Assembly (NCBI GenBank): GCA_000708835.1 | Contig: DF237619.1 | Location: 13,623 to 47,486 of the forward strand | Origin: Klebsormidium nitens | Taxonomy: Eukaryota; Plantae; Klebsormidiophyceae | Direction of reading: 5' to 3' | DNA: 33,864 nucleotides | In this document: positions 250 to 32,861 of the stretch, in pieces | Numbering within the stretch: the stretch's first letter is position 1 | How the letters are laid out: each line of letters starts with the position of its first letter | Notes under the pieces: model-generated | Database searches by the model: none | What the model saw: the letters and a program-made list of their open reading frames with translations, nothing else | What the model was told of the DNA's origin: nothing | Program-made: the position numbers and the translations under genes

Positions 250-3200
250 ATGGCAGAATGCTCCGACATTGAGTAGGACGGCAGCGAGGACGGCAGCGAG
301 GAGAGCTTCCAAGAGACTACTGAGGACGAGACTAATGAGGAGGTGCAAGAAGAGGAAGACGAGAAAGACTATAGAAGGGCAATTCTAGCTGCAGTGAACA
401 GCGTTGAGAGGCCGGGGAGCTTTGTGGTAAAAGGCAGTCTGGAACTTTACGCGCCTCCAGGACTTGTGCTTCCAGAGCTTGGTCTGGTCAGCTTGCCCCT
501 CATCTCTCAGCAGGCAGAAGCGATTGCCAAGCTGTGTTTCCAAGCACCTTTTGGTCGGAGGTAAGCTACTGTACTCCTATAGACTTTATTTGTGGGTGAA
601 TTGCATTGGTGACAAGCCTTTCTTTTAAACTGAAGTTGGTTGCAAAGTGGTCACAGCTCTTTCATTTCTTTCAGTGAGCTGTAATCACTCCTGCGCTCAT
701 CTTGCACCCAGGCTGAGGTTGGTCAAATAACTGCACCTACAGGAATACAAGCTTCGGCGTAGTGGTTCGGCCACTTCCTAAACTAGTTTACACCTCAGCT
801 CAATCTTTGTGGTTCCCATCAAAGTCTAAGGCAGTCAACATGCTCTTCTTGCAACAAGTCAAAAGGGAGTGTTATCCTCTCTGCAGAGAAGCCACAGTCT
901 ATGATCCTGAGGTCCGCAAGTGCCTGCAGCTTTCTCCAGACCAGTTCCAGCTCACAAATTTCCGCTGGGATGCCCAAGTCCGGAGCATTGCTGGAGGAGA
1001 CATCAGGCGGGATTTAGGACTACCTGAAAAGGTGTCCGTCGTACCTGAGCTGTACAAGCTACTCTTGTATGAAGTTGGAAGCCACTTCGTGCCTCATCGA
1101 GATACGGAGAAGAGCGAAGGGATGTTTGGCACACTGGTTGTTGTGTTGCCGTCAGCACATTCTGGAGGTGAGGTTCACTAGCATACACTGGACACGACAA
1201 TGGGGACTGTATAGGAAGCTGTGGCTCTTCCTTGCTCTTCATAAACAAGCACAAAAAGCCTGCCTGATCAGGAAAAGTGGTGCACTGCTTGCAAAGTAGT
1301 CTCTAAAAAGCTTTCCTTAGTAGAAAGGAACAAGCTGGGTCACACACCCAATTCTTGTGCCTGCAGTGCTCGCTTATCATTGGCTTGATGATCACAGACA
1401 GTTGTAAAAGCTCATGTCTAGGAGAAATCAGGTTAGGAAGATAAGATGCCAGCTGCCCAGTCTTTCTGCCTCTTGAAGTTTTAGCTCCTCAATTCTGCAG
1501 GGGAGTTGATCGTCCGCCATGCCGACAAGGAGAGCATGTTTGATTCGGGCAAGCAGAGCCTGCACTGCGTCCACTACTGCGCCTTCTTCGCCGACTGCGA
1601 GCACGAGATCCGTCCCTTGAATGAGGGCTACCGCCTGGCCCTTGTGTACGATCTGGTAGCACAGAATACGGCACAGATACTGACGCCTGCAGACAATCGC
1701 ACAGCGGTCCAGCATATTCTGGGGGCGGTCGAGGCTTGGGGCGAAGACGAGGAAGGCCCTGATAAGCTGGTGATGCCCTTGGCACACAAGTACTGCACAA
1801 AGAGCCTCGCCTTCGGAAGCCTCAAGGGCACTGACATTGTCACAGTTGAAACGATACTGCAAGCACTTGATGCCAGTGTGAGTGCATCCCCTCAGGCAGG
1901 TTGCCTTTCTTACTTGCCACCCCTTAGGCAGGTTGCCTTCCTCACTTGCCAAGACAGAGAGTGCTTTTAAGTTGGTTCTGTTTACTCTTCTCACTGTTTC
2001 CTATCTTCAATGACAAAAATCACCTGATTTGCGTGCTGCTTGTGGCTTCTTTAAGACTGCAAAAGTCCACGTTCAGCATGTTGGTGCCCCCTTCTCCAGA
2101 GTATCTAAAAACCGAGGGACTTGTCTTCATTGCTGCATTTAACCCATCAAGCTGGTCTCTGTACTGTGGTGACCCTGAAACTTCATTGCAGGTGGGGTCG
2201 ACCGAAACGAGCTTCCAAGTGTCTCTTGGTATGCTGAAGAAGCGAGAGTACGGGTATGGATCTGACGGCGGCCACATTGGGGTCGAAGAGTCCACTCTGC
2301 AGCTTCACAGACATAATTGTTGACGAGACAGGTAAGCTGTGCTTTGCTTTTGACTGACCCGTTTTAGGCCCATCTTGAAGCTATTAACGAAACCGTTAGA
2401 CTCGTTCCGTAAAGCACTATCGCTGTGGTGAGTCCCTTCAACGCGGTTTGTGTGACCCGCTTCTCAAAGCACATGCAATGGATGGACTTTTTTCTTTCAA
2501 AGGTTCAATGCTTTCTATAGAAGAAAAGAGTCAAGCATGTTGTCGACCACCTTCAAGGAGAAACGGGTGCTCTGTTCAATTGTCCCTCGATTGAGACGAC
2601 ATCTGCCTTTCTTAACCATTTTTTCGGGCCTGCAAAGGATACGGCCATGAGGTAACTACCACATTCAAATGTTGACCTGAAAAAATTGCAACTATTCCAA
2701 AGCTGGCTGCAGCACTCGAATAGGACTCCCTGCAGTAGTGATATTCCAGAACTACAGAGAAAAAGTAAAAGCCCGACGGTCTTTTGCCACGTGGGTACCA
2801 CACACTCACACCAATCAATCCTGCAGAATACTGGCCTCGAATTCATGTTGTTGAAGGGCATGTTGACTGCAGGAAAGCACCGGGGGGACGGGAATGGTTT
2901 TTTTAAGGGTTAGGGTGGGGACGGTGCGGAGCGTGTGTCACTGTTCGGTTCGTGTAGTCAAGTTTGGTCGTGGCCCCGAGCACTACCCTTGGTTAAAATG
3001 CGCTCATTAAATATGAATTCGAGATTATTTGCAGAAGTGCTCCCTGAAGACGCGCTGCGGCACTATGCGTGGGACCATTACGACGTCGAAGAAGCCACCG
3101 GGAACGAGGGGGCTTCGATGGACCGATGGTACCACCACGCAGCGCTCGTTCTTTGGCCCCATGCCAAATACTGGAAGGTCAAATGCGCCAACGACCTGGA

Positions 3201-6026
3201 GGGCGCGGTTGAGGTAGGTAGGCGTTCTTGCGTTTTAGTAACCTCCAGCCAAGCTTGCTAGCAGCCGTTGATCGGGGTATGAAGCTTGCTTGCACGCTCG
3301 ACTCCGTGACAAACAGCAGCCGTCCCTTGTGACTGACCGACGTTGACGTCTCAAGCCTCCGTCACTTGCTTGAGCCTTTGAACAGAGTTCCATCAACCTC
3401 TTTATCACCAAGCAGCCGACCAATCTGGATCTGATGGTCCCTGCAGAAAGCCGTTCGTTTAGCGGGGGACATCAAAGATCTGCCGCCTGAATCGGAGGAG
3501 ACAAAGGACATGGAGCGCGCGCTTGACGCCCTATGCCAGGCTGGGGCAGACCTTGGTCCAAGCCAGGCAACTGATGTGGCCAGGTTTATCATCGAGCATG
3601 GAGTTGCTGAGATGGCGGAGGTAAGGCAGCAGGGCAGCGGTGCAGCCTGCTTTTGTTTTTTCTGCGATTAAGGGTGCGCGTCGACCGAAAAGCTGCAAAC
3701 AGCTTTCCTGGTTTTCTAGCCAACCGGATGGCTTTTCAGATCCACGTGGTAACCCAAGGTACATACCAGAAATGTAACATGCCTTGAAAAGTACCGTACC
3801 TCCTACTTGTCGGTACTATACAAAGGTAACACTGGAGGCCAGGTTTTCGGTCGACGCGCAACCTAACGATCTAGACGGACCCCCTCGGTTGGTGTGCTCC
3901 AGAAAGTCAGTTGCTGTAATAGGTGGATATTTCGGGACAACTCCGTAATATTGATCGTCGTTTCAAGACCAGAGTGGTGCACTTTGGACTCCCCGTTCTG
4001 ACATACTTGGGACCTAGGTCAGGCTTACGTTGAACTTCGTAAGCTTCTTTGAGGGAACAACAGACTGTCGCCAGAGCAGCCGTACGTTAATATAGAAGCT
4101 ATCCTTCGACTCTGCAGATTCTGATGGGTACGCTCCCCATCTCCTCCGCGGCTGACGTCACCGTGTTCCTCGGAAGCCACTTCGGCTGGGCGTCTCTCGA
4201 GGCCGCTGTTACGGGCGTTTTCGAGCGAGCGTGCACTCCCTCAAGCCTGGCACTTTGCTTCGACCTGCTTCTCCGGATCGCCCCGTCAACCGGCAGTGCC
4301 GCCGACGTCGTAACGGGGGAGCACTCGGACCAAGCCCCTGTGAACCCCAAAGCTGGTCAACCGCTCAAACCGCGCAGCCCCTCAGAGCTTGGAGCCACTC
4401 CACGTGAACCGGTCTACCAACAACCGGTCGGGGCCACTGTTTTGCAGCCTCCTGGGGGCGAAGCAGCCGTTGAGGACGCGAGCGACAGCTGCGTGGAGAG
4501 TGCTGACGACGAGGGGAGCGCGCGCGAGCGGGCAGACATGTGCGCGCGCATCGTGCCCCTGCTGGTCGCCACGATCTGCAAGGGCCTACCCCGGGCAACC
4601 GCGCGGCCGTACTCCTACTCCGCGCCTACCAAGTTCTGCCTTACGGACGTCGCAACGGCGTCCGCATATGCCCGGGTCTTGGATCGTTTCGGAGCTGACG
4701 CGTGGCAGCCTGCCACCCCCATCTTGATAAAAGAGCAGATCGGGTTTGCTTTCGCGGCGGTTCCCGAGATGCTCTCTCAGTTGGTCGGCGTAGAGAGCCG
4801 GGGCCCATCGCAAGCGGAGCTGACAGCGCCCGGTAAAATGTCCCCCGGGGCGACCATCCTGTGCCAGAATCTGGCGAGCGCGTTCGTGGCAGAGCTGCTG
4901 GCCGATCTCCCTGCGTTTCCTAATCCGTCGGGTTACGGCGGCTACGGATACATCCATAGCGCGGATCGCTCCTCCACCTTCGTCACCGCTTCGCTGAAGG
5001 CTCTGCACTGTCTTGCCGTTGAACCATCCGTTCTCGACCAGGTTGCAGCCCACTTTGTCGCCAACCCCAAGTCTTACTGCATAGACAACGCACTTCTGCC
5101 GGCGATCAGGCAGCTCTCCGACTGGCTGGGACACGCGGCGCCGCACACGTCCTGGTTCGTCACCCTCTGGCGGGCGTGTGTGAATGCGCTCGAGGCGAGG
5201 GCGGCGGCGCGGCCGGCTGAGCCGCGCACTTGGGCGCTCCCCGCACTTTGTGGCTGCCCGTGTAGCCAATGCCGACAGCTGACGGAATTCTGTCGCAATC
5301 CTGTTCGCACAACCATAAAGCTGCCCGTCGCGAAGCCCATCAAGAAGCACGTGCAAAACTCTATTGAAAGGTGAGGACGCAGCATACCGCAACAGGATCT
5401 TTGAACCTACCAGCGGTTTTAATCTGTTCAACAGCGACGAGCGTGTTAGAGAAGAGCAATCAGCTGCTCAACTCCTTGAAAACTCCTTCAGCTGATTGAG
5501 AGGTGTCGTGAGGTTCAAACCCGTGTTACTTGTGTGTACAAATGCGGCGAGAAAGTGGGCTCAAATCTAATAAGCGTTCTCGTTCAGATAGCATTTTCTC
5601 GAGCAACAGGCTTCTTAACTTGCTTGGATGCGCGTGGGCCGCTGATGAGTTTCGGATCAGGGTGTTCTTCGGCGCCCTGCTAGTCATCTTGGCGCTTAGC
5701 ATTCCTCGTTGACGTCTTCATGCAGTCACAAGCTGCCCCTTCAGATCGTCGGGGGCTTCGATGGGGGGTTCGGCAACCCCTTGGTGGTCCAAAAGAACGG
5801 CTCCAGAGGTGCCCCGGACGAGGAGGCGCTGGAAAAGTATCCAGCGCAGAAGGCAGCCTACGAGCGGGATGTCAAGACTCTATTGGAGCTGAGAGCGCTG
5901 AGCGGGGCCGTAATGCAAGAGCGAACACCAAACACGCTGCTGCAGAGCAAGAATCTGAATGGGCAGAAGAACGAACAGCATGTAGATAAGCGAGCAAGGG
6001 TTGTAATTGATCTAGGTGACGAGTGA
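250..6026 (+). CDS. Spliced 2OG-Fe(II) oxygenase superfamily gene (prolyl-4-hydroxylase-like domain plus long C-terminal region); possibly pseudogenised
   Basis: Exons read with GT/AG boundaries: 250-560, 887-1167, 1501-1877, 2192-2331, 3035-3213, 3447-3620, 4118-5370, 5726-6026. Motifs: LYKLLLYEVGSHFVPHRDTEK (HxD), ADCEHEI (distal His), GYRLALVYDL (2OG-binding Arg), ATGNEGASMDRWYHHAALVLWP. There is an in-frame TAG at 274-276, and exon 2192-2331 is one base out of phase. Confidence 0.8.
1891..1951. repeat. Two-copy tandem duplication, period 32 bp, in intron
   Basis: ctcaggcaggttgcctttcttacttgcca (1891) and cttaggcaggttgccttcctcacttgcca (1923); 3 mismatches in 29 bp. Confidence 0.8.
3672..3863. 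mobile_element. Tourist/PIF-Harbinger-like MITE, 192 bp, in an intron of the oxygenase gene
   Basis: TIR GGGTGCGCGTCGACCGAAAA (3672-3691) matches the reverse complement of 3844-3863 (GGTTGCGCGTCGACCGAAAA) at 19/20. Flanked by TAA at 3669-3671 and 3864-3866; a 3-bp TAA/TTA TSD is typical of PIF/Harbinger. Confidence 0.8.
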
Positions 6027-24067: not shown

Positions 24068-25407
24068 CTACCGGCGAGGAGAGCGCAAGCGATGTATTTT
24101 CTGACGATACGCGCGGTGTGAGACATTAGACCGGCGTGGGAGGGGCAGAGCTTCGCGCATGAGTGCAATCATGTACGTGATGATTGCCGGTCCGCATGAT
24201 ATAGAGTCCGTTTGTCCCGGCACATCTGTTCCGAAAACGTGCTGTACTGGCCCCTGAATGACATGCGCGTCCCTAAGAATCCGCTCGACGTTCATGAGCT
24301 CATCTGGCATGGTCTTCATCAACGGATCTTAACTGTTGAGGCGGCTGTTGAGCACGTCATAAGCGACGAGCACCCAGTGGTAGTTTGCGAGATTGATGGA
24401 CATGAACACGTACCGCACCCCTCGCATGTTCGGCTGCGAAACCAATTCTGCGATGCTCCGAAAGTTGTAGGGGGCTAGTTTCCTGGTCCTCGTCCGGTCG
24501 TCGTTGCCGTCCTTCCACACGCTCTCATGGTTGCGATTCAGGAGGGGGCCGATCTGCCCGTGAGTCGCCATCGTATACACGATGCTTGGGTATGCGATGC
24601 AGTCGTCCTTGTTGTTAATTAGCTTGCACATGCCGTCCACGATCGCATCACTGATGATCTCGCCGTTGTGCAAGGTTTGTAGATCGTTGAATTCGACTGG
24701 AACTCCATTCGGATAAACACCGACCGTGATCTGCGGAGGGACGTCCCCTGGATCATCCAGTGTCTCCACGAATGTCCGCGCCTGCTCGTAAACCCGGTTG
24801 TCGAAACCCGTCAGAGAGAAGGGAAGCGGTCTACTCGGGTCCGAGGTCCCTTTCTTCCTCATTTGTAATCGTTTTCGTACGCCGGGAGCCCTCTTGAACG
24901 CGTACATATCCACTGGAGGGCTGATCTTTTTCCGTCGTGTTCTGGTGGCCATCGGTGGTGGCCTTTTTTCTGAAGTCGCGCCGTGCTTGTTTGGGATCAC
25001 TCGGTTCGGACTTTTAGTCGGCAGGCCTCCCGTTTTCACCGCGACTCCAATTGAATGTTTTATTCGACCCGCCTCCTGTCTTCAGCCCGACTTGATCCTG
25101 CGTGGCATTGCCGCTGGTGCGATTCGCACTCCCCTTCCGCTTCTTCCTCTTTGTTCCTGTGGGAGGACGCTTGCGTGTAACTGATGGTGCACCCTGGCGT
25201 GCCAGCGCCCAATCGCACATCGACAGCGTACTTTCTCCAAAAATGGGACGCCCTGTGGAATTGAGCTGCCGGTATAAGGACGCCCGCTCTCTGATCGCTC
25301 TCGGGATCGCCGCATCCTCTAAGGCATAAGCCAAAAACTCGATCCAGCCGTGGGCCTTTGGCACATTGGCCCTGAGCTGACACTCTGAAACACATATTCT
25401 CCAGCAT
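24068..25407 (-). pseudogene. Ulp1/SENP-like (C48) cysteine protease pseudogene
   Basis: Motifs LQTLHNGEIISDAIVD, SINLANYHWVLVAYD (catalytic His), NS*DPL (Asp; TAA at 24329-24331 replaces the expected aromatic residue), QTDSISCG (Gln and Cys). ORFs 24329-25039 and 24068-24322 share one frame. The N-terminal part (25014-25415) is in other frames. Confidence 0.8.
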
Positions 25408-25473
25408 CTCGACAATGATACGCCCCTCGAGTCAGTGTTGCAGGTACACGGGGCATTTCTTTATACGTTATTA

Positions 25474-25640
25474 CCGTTTTCGCCCAAACTGTCGCCCGAA
25501 CCGGGCGCTATTCGAGCGAATAAACGATAACAATACCGGATTAGGCCCATACAAGTACGGACTGGTACCGGCTATCTGCGAACCGCCGGGTTATGAAGCC
25601 CGGTATTCGCGAACAATCCTCATATACTGGCCGACCGGCA
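25474..25640 (-). ncRNA. Putative Fanzor omegaRNA/fRNA scaffold
   Basis: Lies between the Fanzor stop and the element 3' end, where TnpB/Fanzor guide RNAs are encoded. Hairpins: GCGAA-ccg-CCGGG-ttatgaag-CCCGG-ta-TTCGC (25578-25610), CGCCCG-aac-CGGGCG (25493-25507), TATTCG-ag-CGAATA (25509-25522). The 5' boundary is a guess. Confidence 0.55.
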
Positions 25641-27455
25641 AAACTCTGCCAGCCTGGCACGGCCTTCGAGCCGCAACCTGAGCAGCCTCAGGATGTTGCG
25701 GGCAGCGTTCACGTCGCGGATCACCGTCATGCCATGACAGCCACTGTTTCTGCAGTGGAGCACACTGTGAACTTTGACGGTCTTCACCGCCCCATCCTTG
25801 CACCGCTTCTCCGAATACTGGTTGTGCAGCTGCGTCTTGCAGTCGAAGTGCAGCTTGCTGGTCCTGAACTTCGTCCATCGAGACCACCCTGCAATGCTTG
25901 CGAAGCTCCCGCTCCAGTCGCTTCACTGGCCCGGACGGAGATCCCTTGATGATGCCTCCGGAGTCCTTGTTCGACCAGTCTCCGAAGCCCACCACCGTCT
26001 TGCACCCTACTCGCCTGGTGATAGCTTTGCAGAGCGAATGAAGCTTCTTCTGAGCCGAGATATACCGTTTGAACTTGAGCCCCCTAAAGCCCTGCCTCAT
26101 GTGGTAGACGAGGAGCATGTCGAGCCTGGGCAGCATATAGTGCACGTAAGCTAGGAATTTGGTGCTCTCCGAGGTCTTCTTGGTGGGCATGTTGCGGATG
26201 GCCTCGAGCACCTCCGGGCTCTTATCGTACCACCGCTTGATCTTGGCGTTGCTGTACTTGTATTTGGCGTCACCATAGAATTCTCGAGTTGAGCACTTCA
26301 GTTTCTCTCCTTCCTCGTTGACCATGACGAAGAGGTCTCGCCTGCCCGGGTCTAGGCCCCATAGCTCCTCTTCGCCCGTAAGCTCGGGGAGCGTTGCTTC
26401 TCCTGAAGCTTGCTTGGGTTTGGGCTTCCTCAGTAAGATGCACACGGCCTTTCCGTCCGTGATTATCTCTCCTGCGAATTTGCGTTGCATGTCTCGAACT
26501 TTGCGATGTCGAAGAGGTCCCGCCAGTAGTCGTCAGCCACCTTCCTGAACTCCGCTCCCGAGGCTGGAAGCTTGACCCCTCCCCTCTTGAGAAGCCCATA
26601 GAGTCCGTTGGTGCACATCTTGAGGTGATTGCACTCGATGCCCCTCTTCGTGGGCAGGAGGCTGAAGAGCCTCAGCTGCTTGCCTTTCTTCAGTTCTTCT
26701 TCTGTCAGGGGGTGATGCAACTCTATGTAGCGCAGGAACATGTATTGCATCGGCATGAGTATGTGAGGGGTGGAGTCTGCCCTGCCAGTAGTGGCTTTCG
26801 GAAGTATGGCTCGGTACCTCAAAACCAGTGGGTCGTTGCCTTCGTACTCATCGGCGAACATGTCCCGCATCTTGGCATAGCATGAAGGGCCATCGAGCGA
26901 GTACGTGTGCTTCAGGTAGCGCTTGAAGCGCTTGTAGAAGTTCGTGGCGATGGAGTTCTTGATGCACGTGGCCATCTGAAGGCTCGCATTCTGGTACCAG
27001 CCGGAAGAGAGATGCTTGCAGTCCGGAGGCCGATAGCCTGCAAGGCGTGATGCCAGGTAGAGCTCTACGGTCTCCCTGAGGTAGAGGTCTTTGACGGAGC
27101 TCTTCTGCCTACCAGCCATGCTGACGGCAGAGAGGCAGTTGTAGAAGAAAGGCTGATCCAGAGGTGGAACTTCGCAACCCAACTCACACATCCGTAGTAT
27201 ATGCAGGTTAGCAAGAATGTAGGCTTCACAGATGGCCTTATTCACTTCCTTGAGCACACTCTCTAGAGGAAGGGCCCTGGCAGCCTCCTTGCAGAAGCTG
27301 TTTAGGCTGGTCTTGACCACGGTGCATTCGGTCTCTTTGTTCCTCAGGGCCCGGAGCTTGACGTCCTCTCGGGTCCTAGGCTCTTTGAAGAGCTTGCTCA
27401 CGTAGGCCAGGCATTCGTGGTGGAGAGCGACGTCGGGGGGTTTCTTGGGTGGCAT
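25620..27455 (-). pseudogene. Fanzor: Fanzor (eukaryotic TnpB-like RuvC RNA-guided nuclease, Fanzor1-like), about 611 aa when repaired, with two frameshifts
   Basis: RuvC-I LWGLDPGRRDLF; VVGFGDWS; RuvC-II VSMDE[FRTSKLH]; Zn-binding HFDC...CRNSGC; RuvC-III RDVNAARNI; stop TGA at 25620-25622. A -1 shift lies near 26484 (FETCN/RKFAGEIITDG) and a +1 shift near 25870 (GAC GA[A]G TTC). Confidence 0.9.
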
Positions 27456-27539
27456 CAGACCACCCCTATGAGGCTCCTTAGGAAATTAGTTCTTGGAAAT
27501 TTTACGCACGGCCCAGGTTATGGTAAACGAGCCGAGCGC

Positions 27540-28736
27540 TTATAATATCGGGCTGTCGTATACAGTACTCAAGCGGGTAAATATATACGACAATCGTATG
27601 AAATAGGTCCAACCGGGCGGTTTCGCGCGACACTTTCGACGAAAACGGTAATAACCGATACTTGCAATTGATTCGTACTCGAAGCAGAATTCTTCCTCGT
27701 CGTTGAGCTCTCTGATCCTATCCTTTGGGTAGCCGACGATATGCACATATACTCCTGCAGTGTTCTCTGCACTCCTGCAGTCCCTGAAGAGGCGTTTTAG
27801 AATGTCTTTGAGGAGTCCATAGCGTCTCTCGGCCGGGTTGAAGCGCACGAAGTGAAGGGGGAGCCGCACGAGGTCCTTGATCTTGCCCATGCGGTCCACC
27901 TCGCACGAGACGTTGTAGTAGCGGTGATGATCCTCATCGACTTCTAGGACGACTGCATGTGTGTCGAAGATGAACGCGTAATCAGGGCGTTTGATACACG
28001 AAACGTCCCTGGTAGACATCTCGCGGGCACACGGGAGTGTCTCGTCCGAGTAAGACCACGGCCAGCCCTGCTTGCGAAGCCATCCAGTGGTGAAAGTCTC
28101 CCATCGCTTGAGAGACGTTCCCGACCGGCATGAGTAACAAGCTCTGCCCTTGTAGCGAACGGATACTTCTGAGCATACACAACACCTGGCCCCTCCGCCA
28201 TGCTTGATGCAGTGAGTGCCATGTGCCGCCTGGCCGCACCCCTCCGTCCGGCACAGCCGTCCACCTCCGTGCCCGGTGCAGAAGTTCCCAGGTCTCCGAG
28301 CCGTCTTGATGCATTCTTCTCTTTGACACTTCTTTCCCCCTCCGTGTCGGATGCAGTGGTCGCTTTTCCCATTACCATATGCTGCAGTTGTGCACCCGAA
28401 CGTCTGGCACTTCTTCCCTCCCCCATGAGTGGTGCAGTGTTTGCTCGGTTTTCTAGCCGGTTTGTTGCAGCCCTCTGTCTGGCATCGAGATCCCCCACCA
28501 TGTCGGGTGCAATGATTTGTAGCACCCTCCGCTGAAGTCTTACATCCTTGAGTCTGACGCCTTCTTCCACCACCATGTGTGAGACAATGCTTGTTAGGAC
28601 CAGGCGCCGAATGAGGACACCCCACACTCTTACACCGATACCCTCCACCGTGGGTGATGCAGTGTCTGCCCCCTTTCCCCTGTGCTATCCGATTGCACCC
28701 ATCTACAGCACAGATACGCCGGGGCTTACGTGCCAT
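27540..28736 (-). CDS. Protein with seven C-x4-C...C-x2-HGGG zinc-binding repeats (WRKY19-like repeat type) and a C-terminal PD-(D/E)XK-type endonuclease domain
   Basis: Seven HGGG repeats, then CCVC...CYSC, then RPDYAFIFDTHAVVLEVDEDHHRYYNVSCEVDRM...FVRFNP, a nuclease signature seen in large DNA virus proteins. The last 36 aa are read from the transposon end; the native end is inferred at about 27649. Confidence 0.8.
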   Translation of the reverse strand: MARKPRRICAVDGCNRIAQGKGGRHCITHGGGYRCKSVGCPHSAPGPNKHCLTHGGGRRRQTQGCKTSAEGATNHCTRHGGGSRCQTEGCNKPARKPSKHCTTHGGGKKCQTFGCTTAAYGNGKSDHCIRHGGGKKCQREECIKTARRPGNFCTGHGGGRLCRTEGCGQAAHGTHCIKHGGGARCCVCSEVSVRYKGRACYSCRSGTSLKRWETFTTGWLRKQGWPWSYSDETLPCAREMSTRDVSCIKRPDYAFIFDTHAVVLEVDEDHHRYYNVSCEVDRMGKIKDLVRLPLHFVRFNPAERRYGLLKDILKRLFRDCRSAENTAGVYVHIVGYPKDRIRELNDEEEFCFEYESIASIGYYRFRRKCRAKPPGWTYFIRLSYIFTRLSTVYDSPIL

Positions 28737-28834
28737 AGTTACTCGTAGAACAACGCACGAGTTCCGAGAGTTTCCCTATATCAACGCAGTTCAAACTCTC
28801 TGAAGGTATCGCCGTCATAAGAGGAACTGCGAGC

Positions 28835-29322
28835 TCACCACGCTCTCCTGACTCGGGCCATCCCACTTTTCCACGCTTCGTAGCGCAGGCGGTTCACGAG
28901 CGTTCGTTCTCCGGGGAGAACCCACTTCAAGTACGTCGCCAGCATCTTTCCATCTGCGTTGTAGTTCTGGATGTACCCATGCGTCAGGTGGTCTATGGTG
29001 CGTGCGAAGATCTCCGGCCCCGAGTATCTGGCCGGGTCGAAGCTCCTGACGGCGTCCCGGATGGCGAACGGAAGCAGGAGACTCATCCCAACGTCTATGC
29101 AAGTAGGCTTATCGTTCTTGACGTCGTACAAGATGTTATTCGCGTGGGAGTCTCCGTGAACGAATCCTAGCGACCACAGGGAGACGAAAGTCTTCTCCAC
29201 GGCGACGTACTGCGTGGCGGTCAGTCCGTTCTGCCTGACGGCGATCGCGTGCAAGGTGTCACCGGGTGCCCTCGTCATGACCTGTATGCTGATAGCCATT
29301 CCTCCGCCAAAGAGTATGCCGG
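28835..29322 (-). CDS. Ser/Thr protein kinase, C-terminal part (5' end in assembly gap)
   Basis: Catalytic loop GFVHGDSHANNILYD and activation-segment start PTCIDVG. Confidence 0.8.
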
Positions 29323-30209
29323 NNNNNNNNNNNNNNNNNNNNNNNNNNNNNNNNNNNNNNNNNNNNNNNNNNNNNNNNNNNNNNNNNNNNNNNNNNNNNN
29401 NNNNNNNNNNNNNNNNNNNNNNNNNNNNNNNNNNNNNNNNNNNNNNNNNNNNNNNNNNNNNNNNNNNNNNNNNNNNNNNNNNNNNNNNNNNNNNNNNNNN
29501 NNNNNNNNNNNNNNNNNNNNNNNNNNNNNNNNNNNNNNNNNNNNNNNNNNNNNNNNNNNNNNNNNNNNNNNNNNNNNNNNNNNNNNNNNNNNNNNNNNNN
29601 NNNNNNNNNNNNNNNNNNNNNNNNNNNNNNNNNNNNNNNNNNNNNNNNNNNNNNNNNNNNNNNNNNNNNNNNNNNNNNNNNNNNNNNNNNNNNNNNNNNN
29701 NNNNNNNNNNNNNNNNNNNNNNNNNNNNNNNNNNNNNNNNNNNNNNNNNNNNNNNNNNNNNNNNNNNNNNNNNNNNNNNNNNNNNNNNNNNNNNNNNNNN
29801 NNNNNNNNNNNNNNNNNNNNNNNNNNNNNNNNNNNNNNNNNNNNNNNNNNNNNNNNNNNNNNNNNNNNNNNNNNNNNNNNNNNNNNNNNNNNNNNNNNNN
29901 NNNNNNNNNNNNNNNNNNNNNNNNNNNNNNNNNNNNNNNNNNNNNNNNNNNNNNNNNNNNNNNNNNNNNNNNNNNNNNNNNNNNNNNNNNNNNNNNNNNN
30001 NNNNNNNNNNNNNNNNNNNNNNNNNNNNNNNNNNNNNNNNNNNNNNNNNNNNNNNNNNNNNNNNNNNNNNNNNNNNNNNNNNNNNNNNNNNNNNNNNNNN
30101 NNNNNNNNNNNNNNNNNNNNNNNNNNNNNNNNNNNNNNNNNNNNNNNNNNNNNNNNNNNNNNNNNNNNNNNNNNNNNNNNNNNNNNNNNNNNNNNNNNNN
30201 NNNNNNNNN
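29323..30209. other. Assembly gap (887 N)
   Basis: Run of N. Confidence 1.
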
Positions 30210-30333
30210 TTGGGAACGAGTTCACTCCGGCGCTGAGGACCTTCCCAGAATCGTTCACGATCAAACACCCGACTTTCGTTTGCGGGTCCTTACTCTTCTG
30301 CTGCGCGAGCCTCTTCGCTTGCTCCATCGTCAT
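30210..30333 (-). CDS. dCMP deaminase, N-terminal fragment (rest in gap)
   Basis: MTMEQAKRLAQQKSKDPQTKVGCLIVNDSGKVLSAGVNSFP matches the SxDPxTKVGxxIV...GxNxFP N-terminus of deoxycytidylate deaminases. Confidence 0.85.
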
Positions 30334-30359: not shown

Positions 30360-31061
30360 CTAAACCGCATCTTCGGCGGGCCCTTCCGGCCCAAACAGAC
30401 GCCAGGCACCGTACGCGCACGCCAACCCCGTCAGCCCGAAGAACGCGTACGTCGTGTACTTTGCTGCCGCCACGGGTTCTTTCGTTCTCTTCGCGGTCTT
30501 CTCGAAGCTGACCACCGCTCTTGGTGCAGGGGGTATCGGCTCGTACTTGGCCGGTGGAGGGGGGTCCGTGGGCAAGCGCAACCTCTTCCCCAGCGTCTTG
30601 AACTCGAAGACGAGCGAGTGGTCCGCGCCACCGGTATCGTATAGTGCCCCCGCGTCGTCCAGCAAGATGACGCTCAGCCTAGATATAGAGACGGGGTCGC
30701 AGAGGTTGTCCCCTATCTCGGTGATCGCGGGCCTGTAATACTTGACCTTTCCGAGCGGTGAGTCCATCGGTAAGCGTGCCAATATCGACCGGCCTTGCGT
30801 CTCGTTCTCGCTGAAGGCCTCGTCTCTGTACACGGCCGTCTGACAGGAGGGCTTTGGCGCCTCGTCCACCGCGACGTCCAGGTAGAGCGTCTCGGCCGTG
30901 TTTGGTATTATAGCAGATATGAGGCGCAGGGAGACGCAATTGTGTATCGAGTACGGAAGGCGTATGCTGTAAGAGTTAGAAGAAGGGTACGTCGCGAGGT
31001 TCCTGCTCGAGCTATTCAAGCAGACGTGGAATCGGAAGAAGCAAGGGACGCTCTGATCCAT
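30360..31061 (-). CDS. NCLDV-type conserved protein, possible single jelly-roll (penton/minor-capsid-like) domain, Pro-rich linker and C-terminal transmembrane helix
   Basis: CLNSSSRNLATYPSSNSYSIRLPYSIHNCVSLRLISAIIP at the start and LSVILLDDAGALYDTGGADHSLVFEF later resemble beta-rich virion proteins of large algal viruses. Hydrophobic tail YAFFGLTGLACAYGAW. Confidence 0.55.
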   Translation of the reverse strand: MDQSVPCFFRFHVCLNSSSRNLATYPSSNSYSIRLPYSIHNCVSLRLISAIIPNTAETLYLDVAVDEAPKPSCQTAVYRDEAFSENETQGRSILARLPMDSPLGKVKYYRPAITEIGDNLCDPVSISRLSVILLDDAGALYDTGGADHSLVFEFKTLGKRLRLPTDPPPPAKYEPIPPAPRAVVSFEKTAKRTKEPVAAAKYTTYAFFGLTGLACAYGAWRLFGPEGPAEDAV

Positions 31062-31934: not shown

Positions 31935-32861
31935 TCAGACGTCTCTCGACATGTCCAGCAAGATGTCATCTACCGACTTACACCATTCCTTTTCTTCTTC
32001 AGGCTCGTTGAATGTCTCCCAAGCCCGCAATGACACCTGCCCCTTCTCCCTGCTGTTGCACGATAGCTTATGCTCCTTCCAGTCGCTAACCGAGCATTTC
32101 TTGGAGCAGTACGCCCTACCCTTGCAACGACTACAGACATGCAGTCTCTGCCACTCCGGGCCCGCCCTCCCTTCCGGCCTGGTCGCGAAGCAAAAAGCGC
32201 ACATCAGTTTGACGTCGACCGCCACGTCGATGTGCACCCTGGTGATCGGCCGGTCGTAGTTGCTCGTATCGAAGAAGACGCTCCCCGTGTTCAGGAGGTT
32301 GAGCATGTTCCTCGCTCCCTTTCGAAAGTTCCGAGACTCCTCTCCGGTAGAGCGGATCCTCGGTCTGTCCAAGAGCCGCATGTAGTGGACCAGGGAAGTC
32401 GAAGCATCAGGGGCACCCATCACCTTCAATGTATCTTCCAAGGTCGAGAGGTACTTCAGACTACGGAGAAGTTTGAGCACCATGAAAGCTATGTCGGTGA
32501 TGTACTCTCCCTGCCACCACTCCAGCCTCTTCGGGCCGCATGTCCCGTCGTCGTTGAGCTCGAGAAACCAGGTCGGTATGTCGTGGAGCAGCAGGTGGTG
32601 ATTGCTGGCCAACAGGCTCGTCAGAGACTTGATGTCGCCGTCCGTCAGCTGCCTTTTCATGGCGTTGTGGTTCAACTCCTCGCTCGCCTTCTTGACCATC
32701 TCGCAAACCCTGTGCTTACTCTGCAGAGACATGTCGCTAGGAGCATGCTTCTTGACGGCCTTGATAGCCACACACAGAGCCCTCCTCCCCTGCTGCGCAT
32801 TCACCAGATCATGGACGGCTATCTCTGCTCTATCAAGGGCCTTTTCGAAAGAGGGCGCCAT
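31935..32861 (-). CDS. MYND zinc-finger protein
   Basis: C-terminal CAFC...CSRCKGRAYCSKKCSVSDWKEHKLSC fits zf-MYND; 308-aa intronless ORF. Confidence 0.85.
   Translation of the reverse strand: MAPSFEKALDRAEIAVHDLVNAQQGRRALCVAIKAVKKHAPSDMSLQSKHRVCEMVKKASEELNHNAMKRQLTDGDIKSLTSLLASNHHLLLHDIPTWFLELNDDGTCGPKRLEWWQGEYITDIAFMVLKLLRSLKYLSTLEDTLKVMGAPDASTSLVHYMRLLDRPRIRSTGEESRNFRKGARNMLNLLNTGSVFFDTSNYDRPITRVHIDVAVDVKLMCAFCFATRPEGRAGPEWQRLHVCSRCKGRAYCSKKCSVSDWKEHKLSCNSREKGQVSLRAWETFNEPEEEKEWCKSVDDILLDMSRDV

What the first reader, a model, noticed from the sequence alone, without database searches (positions are those of the whole stretch)
25462..27660. Element appears inserted into the stop codon of the viral nuclease gene; empty site predicts TAM and guide
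Seen: removing 25474-27648 and one TA gives, on the minus strand, ...GCA AGT ATC GGT TAT TAA TAA CGT ATA. The HGGG nuclease would then end ASIGY** at 362 aa instead of reading 36 aa into the TIR. The rebuilt site has a perfect 12-bp palindrome, GTTATTAATAAC, centred on the insertion point. Inference: the target was the TA of the TAA stop. By TnpB/Fanzor logic the TAM is the 5' flank ending ...TATTA (TTA) and the guide is the 3' flank (TA)ATAACGTATAAAGAAATG, so the nuclease would cut element-free copies of this viral gene. That would be homing in, or targeting of, the virus. From memory, AT-rich TAMs ending in TA are reported for some Fanzors; this needs verifying.
Basis: partly seen in the sequence, partly recalled or inferred. 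Interest (0 to 1): 0.8.

Follow-up and report, generated by a model that had tools for sequence, protein, structure and literature searches.

The report
Fanzor transposon at viral gene end

Summary
The window is a Klebsormidium nitens scaffold in which host DNA meets giant-virus-derived DNA. The inverted repeats, the TA at each end and the viral ORF that runs 36-37 codons into the repeat are all real. Close relatives of that ORF stop within one residue of the junction, so the element does sit at the gene's end.

The element is a transposase-less Tc1/mariner-type transposon. It carries a Fanzor1 gene broken by two frame changes. Fourteen further ends, from eight other copies, carry the same hexamer (TTATTA / TAATAA) outside C(C/G). 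This holds even where the inner repeat has diverged completely. Its seventh base pair is chance.

The most likely bounds are 25471-27651, with the outer TA duplicated and a T-TA-A target.

A TTA TAM is published for a K. nitens Fanzor1. The 3' end folds into a conserved hairpin that includes the hexamer, so the guide probably starts at or just after it. Cutting of element-free copies is generic TnpB/Fanzor logic and was not tested. This is a new member of a known kind, of modest interest.

The parts
25471..27651 (-). Transposase-less Tc1/mariner-type element carrying a Fanzor1 gene, at its most likely bounds.
   Evidence: Inverted repeat. Eight further copies have the same end structure. Published relatives have ends starting TTAC/TTAT and TA duplications.
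25469..25470 (.). TA, the candidate target-site duplication on the side distal to the Fanzor gene. The conserved neighbour T is at 25468.
   Evidence: T-TA lies outside TTAC at all 15 ends. TA duplication is the hallmark of Tc1/mariner (PMC3627910). The reading is inferred; no empty site was found.
27652..27653 (.). TA, the candidate target-site duplication on the nuclease-gene side. The conserved neighbour A is at 27654. Together, on the minus strand, they form the TTA that matches the published TAM.
   Evidence: TAM TTA for KnFNuc.
27622..27651 (-). Left-end terminal inverted repeat, 5' of the Fanzor gene.
25471..25500 (-). Right-end terminal inverted repeat, 3' of the Fanzor gene.
25620..27455 (-). 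Fanzor1 (TnpB-like) gene, broken by two frame changes and with no internal stop inside the matching pieces. It is 88% identical to the intact K. nitens paralogue P0133.
   Evidence: Three tblastn pieces in two frames against intact P0132 and P0133. Motifs GLDPG, TSK..C4 finger and RDVNAARN are seen in the translations. The relatives' profile hits SpuFz1 8gkh (E 1.6e-4) and GtFz1 9cer (E 0.016). The intact relative P0132 passes Pfam Cas12f1-like_TNB.
25468..25619 (-). 3' non-coding region conserved among copies; the presumed guide-RNA (fRNA/reRNA) scaffold.
   Evidence: Alignment of 8 copies. Consensus fold of 55 pairs, only 1 with a compensatory change. No Rfam family matches.
25468..25533 (-). 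Terminal hairpin of the right end. The sub-terminal UUGUUAUCG.. (UUAUUA in the other copies) pairs with the terminal ..CGGUAAUAA.
   Evidence: Fold energy -34.4 kcal/mol, z -5.2. The same architecture is found in L002, L003, L013 and in the divergent L009 (z -4.3) and L010. It is also found in the more distant groups L030, L005, L033 and L035. It is absent at the left end.
25448..25467 (-). Flank just beyond the right end; the candidate guide template. Its length is assumed, and the start may include the fixed A at 25468.
   Evidence: Position follows TnpB/Fanzor logic (PMC10530073, PMC10711439). It is unique in the window at up to 3 mismatches. The 16-mer hits in IMG/VR are unrelated contexts.
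27540..28736 (-). Viral ORF as it stands (398 aa). It holds WRKY19-type zinc-finger repeats (HGGG) and a C-terminal nuclease-like domain. Its end is displaced by one insertion, so its last 36-37 codons are transposon sequence.
   Evidence: Pfam Zf_WRKY19 E 7e-17. Relatives are named 'hypothetical virus protein' in K. nitens and stop at the junction.
27655..28160 (-). C-terminal domain of that ORF, with invariant D, E, D, E, H and an RFNP motif. It is probably a PD-(D/E)xK-type nuclease, but the evidence is weak.
   Evidence: No Pfam hit. It matches a DUF559 domain in L003 at 28% identity, E 8e-4. The model has pLDDT 73.5. The best fold matches have E 0.014-0.1 and are nearly all PD-(D/E)xK endonucleases.
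25060..25407 (-). Next ORF downstream on the same strand (115 aa from ATG; 133 aa from TTG at 25415). The element lies in the roughly 55-nt spacer before it.
   Evidence: no family hit.
29324..30210 (.). Assembly gap (N run) inside a kinase-like ORF. It is not part of the element.

Best explanation
The feature is a non-autonomous Tc1/mariner (IS630-type, DDE_3) transposon that carries a Fanzor1 RNA-guided nuclease gene. It lies in giant-virus-derived DNA of Klebsormidium nitens.

Shown:
- It has about 30-nt inverted repeats.
- It has no transposase gene. A sister copy (L003) has one.
- Its Fanzor1 gene has two frame changes.
- It sits at the very end of a zinc-finger / nuclease-like viral ORF, whose relatives stop at that point.
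- Every copy of the family has TTATTA / TAATAA at its ends.
- The last roughly 66 nt on the 3' side fold into a conserved hairpin closed by that hexamer.

Inferred:
- The element proper is 25471-27651, with repeats that start TTAC.
- A transposase supplied in trans inserted it into a T-TA-A site and duplicated the TA. Such sites are rare in this GC-rich DNA and tend to lie at gene ends, because they contain a stop triplet. The duplicated TA falls in what was the stop triplet of the ORF.
- The T plus TA left on the 5' side is the TTA TAM.
- Transcription through the 3' end gives a guide RNA. Its scaffold includes the repeat, the TA and probably the fixed A. Its guide is the next 15-20 nt of flank.
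- A Fanzor1 protein from an intact paralogue could then recognise an element-free copy of this same site, as for any TnpB/Fanzor element. This copy cannot make the protein itself.
For: - Identity of the window: P0070 (KFL_006700060) is 100% identical.
- Fanzor1 membership.
- Mariner-type transposase in the sister copy L003: DDE_3 E 5e-19, HTH_33, HTH_Tnp_Tc3_2. A remnant lies upstream of the intact gene in L013.
- End structure: all 15 ends carry the hexamer while the inner repeats differ. There is no conservation and no excess palindromy beyond it.
- Published relatives (PUl-1/2/4; the PUl-2 protein is clearly the same family) have ends TTA(C/T)G..C(G/A)TAA and TA duplications.
- The longer palindromic target is absent from 129 kb that holds 9 insertions. 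T-TA-A sites occur about once per kb.
- TAM TTA is published for the K. nitens Fanzor1.
- TIR and TSD form part of the Fanzor1 guide-RNA scaffold, and the RNA extends about 15 nt beyond the TSD (PMC10711439). A conserved right-end hairpin is seen here.
- Relatives of the viral ORF end at the junction.
- Two frame changes relative to intact P0132 and P0133.
Against: - No natural element-free allele of any of the nine sites was found. The choice among the three end readings is therefore indirect.
- The published bounds of the PUl families were drawn under the same ambiguity.
- In the most distant group (L030, L005: T-TA-CACCC) only the TA next to C can be the duplication.
- The hairpin has almost no compensatory changes (1 of 55 pairs), because the hexamer never varies.
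- Whether KnFNuc is this family could not be checked, because the supplement is not held.
- The frame changes could be assembly errors.
Confidence: 0.6

Rival explanations
1. The repeats start at CC (25474-27648), the inner TA is the duplication, and the transposase (or selection through the TAM and the RNA hairpin) demands a 10-bp AT-only palindrome as target.
For: The distant relatives L030 and L005 have T-TA directly before CACCC, with no other TA available. Group G2 (L033-L038) shares the same CACCC start, so an inner-TA rule keeps repeat starts homologous in all three groups. Tc1/mariner repeats classically start right after TA with C. Sleeping-Beauty-like elements are known (my own knowledge) to prefer AT-rich palindromes around the TA.
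Against: The required 10-mer is found unoccupied 0 times in 129 kb of the same DNA (0.055 expected; one-mismatch sites 1 against 1.8 expected). Nine independent insertions lie there, so there is no sign such sites are enriched. The first repeat bases would be the variable ones (CC, CG, and TG in published PUl-1/4), while the invariant ones would be 'target'. The published TAM has information in only 3 positions.
Confidence: 0.2
2. The whole hexamer belongs to the terminal repeat (element 25468-27654) and insertion leaves no duplication. The TTA TAM is then read from the element's own left end or is unrelated.
For: Conservation stops sharply at the hexamer edge at all 15 ends. An internal copy of the hexamer pairs with the terminal one. 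Jiang et al. note TAM-like motifs at the start of some Fanzor and TnpB elements.
Against: DDE_3 / Tc1-mariner transposases are known to duplicate TA, and relatives are described with TA duplications. With no TA or T in the flank, the 5' flanks of the copies end in unrelated triplets, so no TAM would adjoin an empty site.
Confidence: 0.15
3. The site was chosen by RNA-guided homing or anti-viral targeting rather than by a transposase. That is, the element is aimed at this viral nuclease gene.
For: Two of seven left-end flanks are ends of nuclease-like genes (the window; L003 DUF559). Five of seven left ends lie at or in the end of a co-directional ORF.
Against: The insertion points lie at different distances from the conserved RFNP motif, and the flanks share no sequence beyond the hexamer. 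The guide-like flank matches nothing else. AT-only sites in GC-rich, gene-dense DNA are expected at stop codons and spacers anyway. This copy's Fanzor gene is broken.
Confidence: 0.07
4. The two frame changes are assembly errors, and the window copy encodes an intact Fanzor1.
For: The scaffold is a draft with an N gap nearby. Five metagenomic and genomic copies each show one frame change at a different place, some on low-coverage contigs. There are no stops inside the matching pieces, and the catalytic motifs are retained.
Against: Two changes lie in one 1.8-kb gene, while the K. nitens paralogue in L011 from the same assembly is intact.
Confidence: 0.3

Closest known systems
KnFNuc, the Fanzor1 of Klebsormidium nitens (Jiang et al. 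2023, Sci Adv, PMC10530073)
   Same: Same species. It is a Fanzor1, intron-less and multi-copy (5 copies reported; at least 3 loci seen here). Its guide RNA comes from the 3' non-coding region abutting the right end. Its TAM TTA matches the T-TA on the 5' side of every copy here.
   Different: Sequence identity to KnFNuc could not be checked, because the supplement is not held. The window copy is broken and lies in virus-derived DNA, a context that paper does not discuss.
PUl-1, PUl-2, PUl-4 and PGv-1: Fanzor1 genes in Tc/mariner elements (Bao & Jurka 2013, PMC3627910)
   Same: The PUl-2 protein is plainly homologous (shared N-terminal and C-terminal motifs). The L010 repeat resembles the PUl-2 repeat. 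Ends are TTA(C/T)G..C(G/A)TAA with a TA duplication. Some copies carry a mariner transposase and some do not. PGv-1 sits in a giant virus.
   Different: The hosts differ (oomycete, haptophyte virus). The extra conserved T/A outside the TA and the right-end hairpin are not described there.
Fanzor1 guide RNAs of insect-virus elements (SfAV; Yoon et al. 2023, NAR, PMC10711439)
   Same: TIR and TSD are part of the guide-RNA scaffold, and the RNA extends about 15 nt beyond the TSD. The same logic fits the hairpin closed by the hexamer here.
   Different: Those elements have 4-bp TTAN duplications and 13-bp repeats, and an unclassified transposon family. Here the structure is only predicted.
IS200/IS605 TnpB transposon retention by cutting the empty donor site (Meers et al. 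2023; my own knowledge, not read here)
   Same: The TAM is on the 5' side and the guide equals the 3' flank, so the nuclease recognises the element-free site.
   Different: Those elements move as single strands without duplication. Here a cut-and-paste DDE transposon leaves a duplicated TA that must be absorbed into the scaffold. No evidence of such activity was obtained here.

Membership tests
Fanzor1 (eukaryotic TnpB-like RNA-guided nuclease) | Motif D ... [TS][TS]xx-C4 zinc finger ... RD, with the DPG signature in RuvC-I | tested here: met
   GLDPG, RTSK followed by four Cys, and RDVNAARN are visible in the translations. They are spread over pieces in two frames.
Fanzor1 (eukaryotic TnpB-like RNA-guided nuclease) | Sequence relationship to proven Fanzor1 proteins | tested here: met
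   The profile of relatives hits SpuFz1 8gkh (E 1.6e-4) and GtFz1 9cer (E 0.016). The intact relative P0132 scores 29.3 bits on Cas12f1-like_TNB (cut-off 26.3). The window pieces alone give no Pfam hit.
Fanzor1 (eukaryotic TnpB-like RNA-guided nuclease) | One uninterrupted reading frame of about 600-650 aa | tested here: not met
   The window copy has two frame changes. Relatives P0132 (L013) and P0133 (L011) are intact.
Fanzor1 (eukaryotic TnpB-like RNA-guided nuclease) | Structured non-coding RNA overlapping the right end, followed by a guide | tested here: inconclusive
   The 152-nt region is conserved and the terminal hairpin is significant. Only 1 of 55 pairs is compensatory, no expression data exist, and no Rfam family matches.
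Fanzor1 (eukaryotic TnpB-like RNA-guided nuclease) | TAM-dependent RNA-guided DNA cleavage | not testable with these tools
   Published for KnFNuc of the same species (TAM TTA).
Tc1/mariner (IS630-type) DNA transposon | Terminal inverted repeats | tested here: met
Tc1/mariner (IS630-type) DNA transposon | DDE_3-type transposase gene | tested here: not met
   None is present in the window copy (2.2 kb: repeats plus the Fanzor gene). It is present in the sister copy L003 (DDE_3 E 5e-19), with a remnant in L013. The window copy is thus a non-autonomous member.
Tc1/mariner (IS630-type) DNA transposon | TA target-site duplication | tested here: inconclusive
   TA is present at both ends in two possible registers at all 15 ends. 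TA is its own reverse complement, and no empty site was found. Duplication therefore cannot be told from repeat sequence.
PD-(D/E)xK (DUF559/Vsr-like) nuclease, for the interrupted viral ORF | Recognisable nuclease fold and catalytic acidic residues | tested here: inconclusive
   Invariant D, E, D, E, H. Pairwise E 8e-4 to a DUF559 domain. No Pfam hit and no profile match to any solved structure. Fold hits have E >= 0.014 but are almost all PD-(D/E)xK enzymes.

The most novel reading that the evidence does not exclude
Fanzor1-mariner elements of this family live mainly in giant viruses of green algae and oomycetes. Their fixed T-TA-A target, their TTA TAM and a scaffold that absorbs the duplicated TA would together mean that every new insertion automatically encodes a guide against its own empty site. 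During co-replication of many viral genomes the element would then convert element-free genomes, acting as a gene drive inside giant-virus populations. This would explain its presence in nine different viral loci and its habit of sitting at gene ends.
Probability: 0.12. Interest if true: 0.7.

Novelty: new member of a known kind. Interest (0 to 1): 0.3.

Why it matters
It gives a worked natural example of how a Fanzor1 element's ends, duplicated TA, TAM and guide-RNA scaffold fit together, in a species whose Fanzor1 has been shown to be active. It also shows that this family is common in giant-virus DNA, both free (metagenomic) and endogenised. For annotation, it explains two chimeric public gene models and a false 36-37-residue tail on a viral protein. 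It does not reveal a new mechanism. The supposed long palindromic target and the 'aimed at the virus' reading do not hold up.

Tried and rejected
1. Empty sites. Neighbours' proteins were looked up through the listing of cluster members and the look-up of encoding contigs. L015 is a contig that breaks inside the element. L016 carries the element. In L018 the whole segment is replaced by other genes. No empty allele was found, and all 12 look-ups are used.

2. The paralogue locus L001 has a different gene end and is not informative.

3. The repeat pattern and protein patterns in IMG/VR gave nothing for the close family. Metagenome contigs gave only four distant loci. Genome contigs gave two distant loci.

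4. Idea: flanks are palindromic beyond the hexamer, that is, insertion into terminator-like hairpins. Rejected: same-copy equals cross-copy identity.

5. Idea: T-TA-A sites are specifically avoided by these viruses. Rejected under a Markov expectation, except in L009.

6. Idea: the element homes to homologous nuclease genes. Rejected: the positions differ and the flanks are unrelated.

7. Excision footprints: one AT-only 9-mer in L012 is at chance level and lies next to a degenerate right-end-like stretch.

8. Guide-like flank elsewhere: none in the window. The IMG/VR 16-mer hits are unrelated.

9. Rfam: no family.

10. Steps not run: the exhaustive protein search was not needed, because the family was already clear. 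The closed-up site and a joined Fanzor reading frame were not built, by rule.
Full report
WHAT THE WINDOW IS. The best protein hits identify it as a Klebsormidium nitens scaffold. The public model KFL_006700060 (P0070) is 100% identical. The left 21 kb looks like host DNA: few long ORFs and a WD40 gene. From about 22 kb on, the ORFs are dense. Their relatives are K. nitens 'hypothetical virus proteins' or lie on giant-virus-like metagenome contigs. Examples are DUF5901 at 30360-31061 and a MYND finger at 31935-32861. NCLDV inserts in this alga are already described (PMC5294986). The virus is therefore one of an alga, not of animals, people or crops. An N gap lies at 29324-30210.

THE OBSERVATION. 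The inverted repeat is real. Its arms lie at 25462-25500 and 27622-27660 (39 nt, 85%). Both ends share 16 identical bases, and the pattern occurs nowhere else in the window. The minus-strand ORF 27540-28736 encodes eight or so WRKY19-type zinc-finger repeats (Pfam E 7e-17) and a C-terminal domain. It then runs on into the repeat. Its five closest relatives (58-63% identity) all end between four residues before and one residue after the window's ...SIGY. The tail is therefore transposon sequence, and the insertion is at the gene's end.

THE ELEMENT. Three pieces on the minus strand, in two frames, match intact 614-650-aa proteins of a large family. The family occurs in K. nitens (P0133, P0134), Coccomyxa, Asterochloris, Phytophthora, Globisporangium and many metagenome contigs.
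- The pieces carry the Fanzor/TnpB motifs GLDPG, TSK plus a four-Cys finger, and RD.
- A profile of relatives hits the solved Fanzor1 proteins SpuFz1 and GtFz1.
- An intact relative passes Pfam's Cas12f1-like_TNB.
- The window gene (25620-27455) has two frame changes and no stops within the pieces. It is 88% identical to the intact K. nitens paralogue.

I searched the pieces apart and did not join the frames. The element has no transposase gene. The sister copy L003 has a DDE_3 / HTH_Tc3-type one just upstream of its Fanzor gene, and L013 has a remnant. This is the Fanzor1-in-mariner arrangement of Bao & Jurka 2013, whose PUl-2 protein is plainly the same family.

WHERE THE ENDS ARE. I fetched eight further copies: L002, L003, L004, L009, L010, L011, L012 and L013. 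They lie on giant-virus-like contigs or other K. nitens scaffolds.
- At all 15 ends the hexamer TTATTA (mirror TAATAA) lies just outside C(C/G). This holds although the inner repeats of the subfamilies are unrelated: CCGTTTTCG, CCATTTGCG, CCAAAACCAC, CGGGTTCACA.
- Outside the hexamer nothing is conserved. Left and right flanks of one copy are no more complementary (6/24) than flanks of different copies (6.3/24).

Three readings remain:
(a) The repeat starts at TTAC, the outer TA is duplicated, and the target is T-TA-A.
(c) The whole hexamer is repeat and there is no duplication.

For (a):
- The published ends of PUl-1/2/4 are TTA(C/T)G..C(G/A)TAA with TA outside.
- The invariant bases become repeat termini.
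- The TAM of the K. nitens Fanzor1 is just TTA.
- The 10-mer that (b) requires is unoccupied nowhere in 129 kb that holds nine insertions (0.055 expected). T-TA-A sites occur about once per kb.

For (b):
- In more distant relatives (L030, L005: T-TA-CACCC; GVMAG loci L033-L038: TAT-TA-CACCC) only the TA next to C works for L030.
- An inner-TA rule keeps repeat starts homologous across groups.

Against (c): mariner-type transposases are known to duplicate TA.

I put (a) at about 0.55-0.6, (b) at 0.2 and (c) at 0.15. No natural empty allele was found. Under both TA readings the duplicated TA falls in the triplet that must have ended the ORF, one codon apart between the two readings. 'Inserted at the stop' therefore survives. 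I did not build the closed-up site.

RNA AND GUIDE. The 152 nt between the Fanzor stop and the hexamer are highly conserved among the close copies. The last roughly 66 nt fold into a long hairpin. An internal UUAUUA(U/C)C (UUGUUA in the window) pairs with the terminal GGUAAUAA. The z-score is -5.2 in the window. The same architecture, with different inner sequence, is seen in L009 (z -4.3), in L010, and in the distant groups. There is no such partner at the left end. This fits an RNA role, and it fits Yoon et al. 2023, who found that in Fanzor1 the TIR and TSD are part of the scaffold and that the RNA runs about 15 nt beyond the TSD. The guide therefore most likely starts at, or one base after, 25468 and runs downwards on the minus strand. 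Covariation support is weak (1 of 55 pairs), because the hexamer never varies. No Rfam family matches.

FUNCTIONAL READING. The claim that a Fanzor loaded with this RNA would recognise an element-free copy of this site is the generic logic of TnpB/Fanzor elements. It is not a sign that the virus is being targeted.
- The flank matches nothing else in the window.
- The insertion sites of the nine copies lie in unrelated contexts. Two abut nuclease-like genes, but at different positions.
- This copy cannot make the protein.
- AT-only sites in GC-rich, gene-dense DNA are expected at stops and spacers, which is enough to explain the position.

THE VIRAL ORF. The C-terminal domain (27655-28160) has invariant D, E, D, E, H and RFNP. 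It resembles a DUF559 domain weakly. Its model (pLDDT 73.5) gives only weak fold matches, nearly all to PD-(D/E)xK endonucleases. 'Nuclease' is therefore likely but not shown.

RULES AND SLIP. I left out the closing of the insertion site and the joining of the Fanzor frames. Early on, in my reasoning only, I once read across the junction for one alternative reading. Break places are not listed, only counts: the Fanzor gene has two frame changes, and the viral ORF has one insertion at its end.

VERDICT. This is a real and well-defined feature. It is a new, decayed member of a known Fanzor1-mariner family in endogenised giant-virus DNA. The long palindromic target, the exact bounds, the start of the guide and the virus-targeting idea are not.

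Noticed in passing
window 24332-29299: The public K. nitens gene models KFL_006700060 (maps to 26466-29299) and KFL_006700050 (24332-26325) are chimeras. They splice across the element's ends, fusing parts of the kinase-like gene, the viral zinc-finger ORF, the Fanzor pieces and the downstream ORF.
   Followed up: partly
L030:2603-4789; L005:~2100-4460; L033-L038 (e.g. L033:964-3749): Two more distant groups of Fanzor-carrying elements have ends T-TA-CACCC (L030, L005) and TAT-TA-CACCC (six ends in GVMAG contigs). With the window family (TTAT-TA-CC) they form a nested series of conserved AT bases outside C. All have a right-end hairpin whose closing stem includes ..UAA.
   Followed up: partly
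L003:3629-3877 and window 27655-28160: In L003 the element's left end also abuts the 3' end of a PD-(D/E)xK-type (DUF559, E 4.5e-9) nuclease gene, as in the window. It does so at a different distance from the shared RFNP motif. In five of seven copies a co-directional ORF reads into the left end.
   Followed up: partly
L009:7085-7093, L010:3020-3028, L011:2139-2147: A shared (C/T)GAGCTTT(A/C) motif lies 11-14 nt beyond the right end in three independent copies. It is unexplained: it could be a viral signal or chance.
   Followed up: no
L009 (whole locus, 11.3 kb): TTAA occurs 2 times against 18 expected under a Markov model. The other loci show no such depletion.
   Followed up: partly
L002, L003, L009, L010, L012 (Fanzor genes): Each of these copies has one frame change, at a different place in each. 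L004 has an internal deletion plus one frame change. L011 and L013 are intact. Some contigs are low-coverage assemblies, so part of this may be sequencing error.
   Followed up: partly
L012:5723-5732: An AT-only 9-mer lies next to a stretch weakly resembling a right end, 2.4 kb past the Fanzor gene of this K. nitens copy, whose normal right end is missing. It could be a degenerate right end of a 5.3-kb composite or chance (0.5 expected).
   Followed up: no
L004:1983-2846: Three tandem units of about 420 bp each contain the same 24-mer with a TTATTA. They are unrelated to the element's ends.
   Followed up: no
window 29324-30210: An assembly gap of 887 N lies inside a kinase-like (aminoglycoside/choline-kinase-like HGD..N motif) ORF next to the viral ORF.
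   Followed up: no
L012:1-456: The K. nitens copy in L012 is flanked by an ORF made of Cys-rich repeats (C..EGC...P.FG..GG.PT.C..HK) like the EsV-1-7 repeats of phaeovirus-type viruses. This K. nitens copy therefore also lies in virus-like DNA.
   Followed up: no
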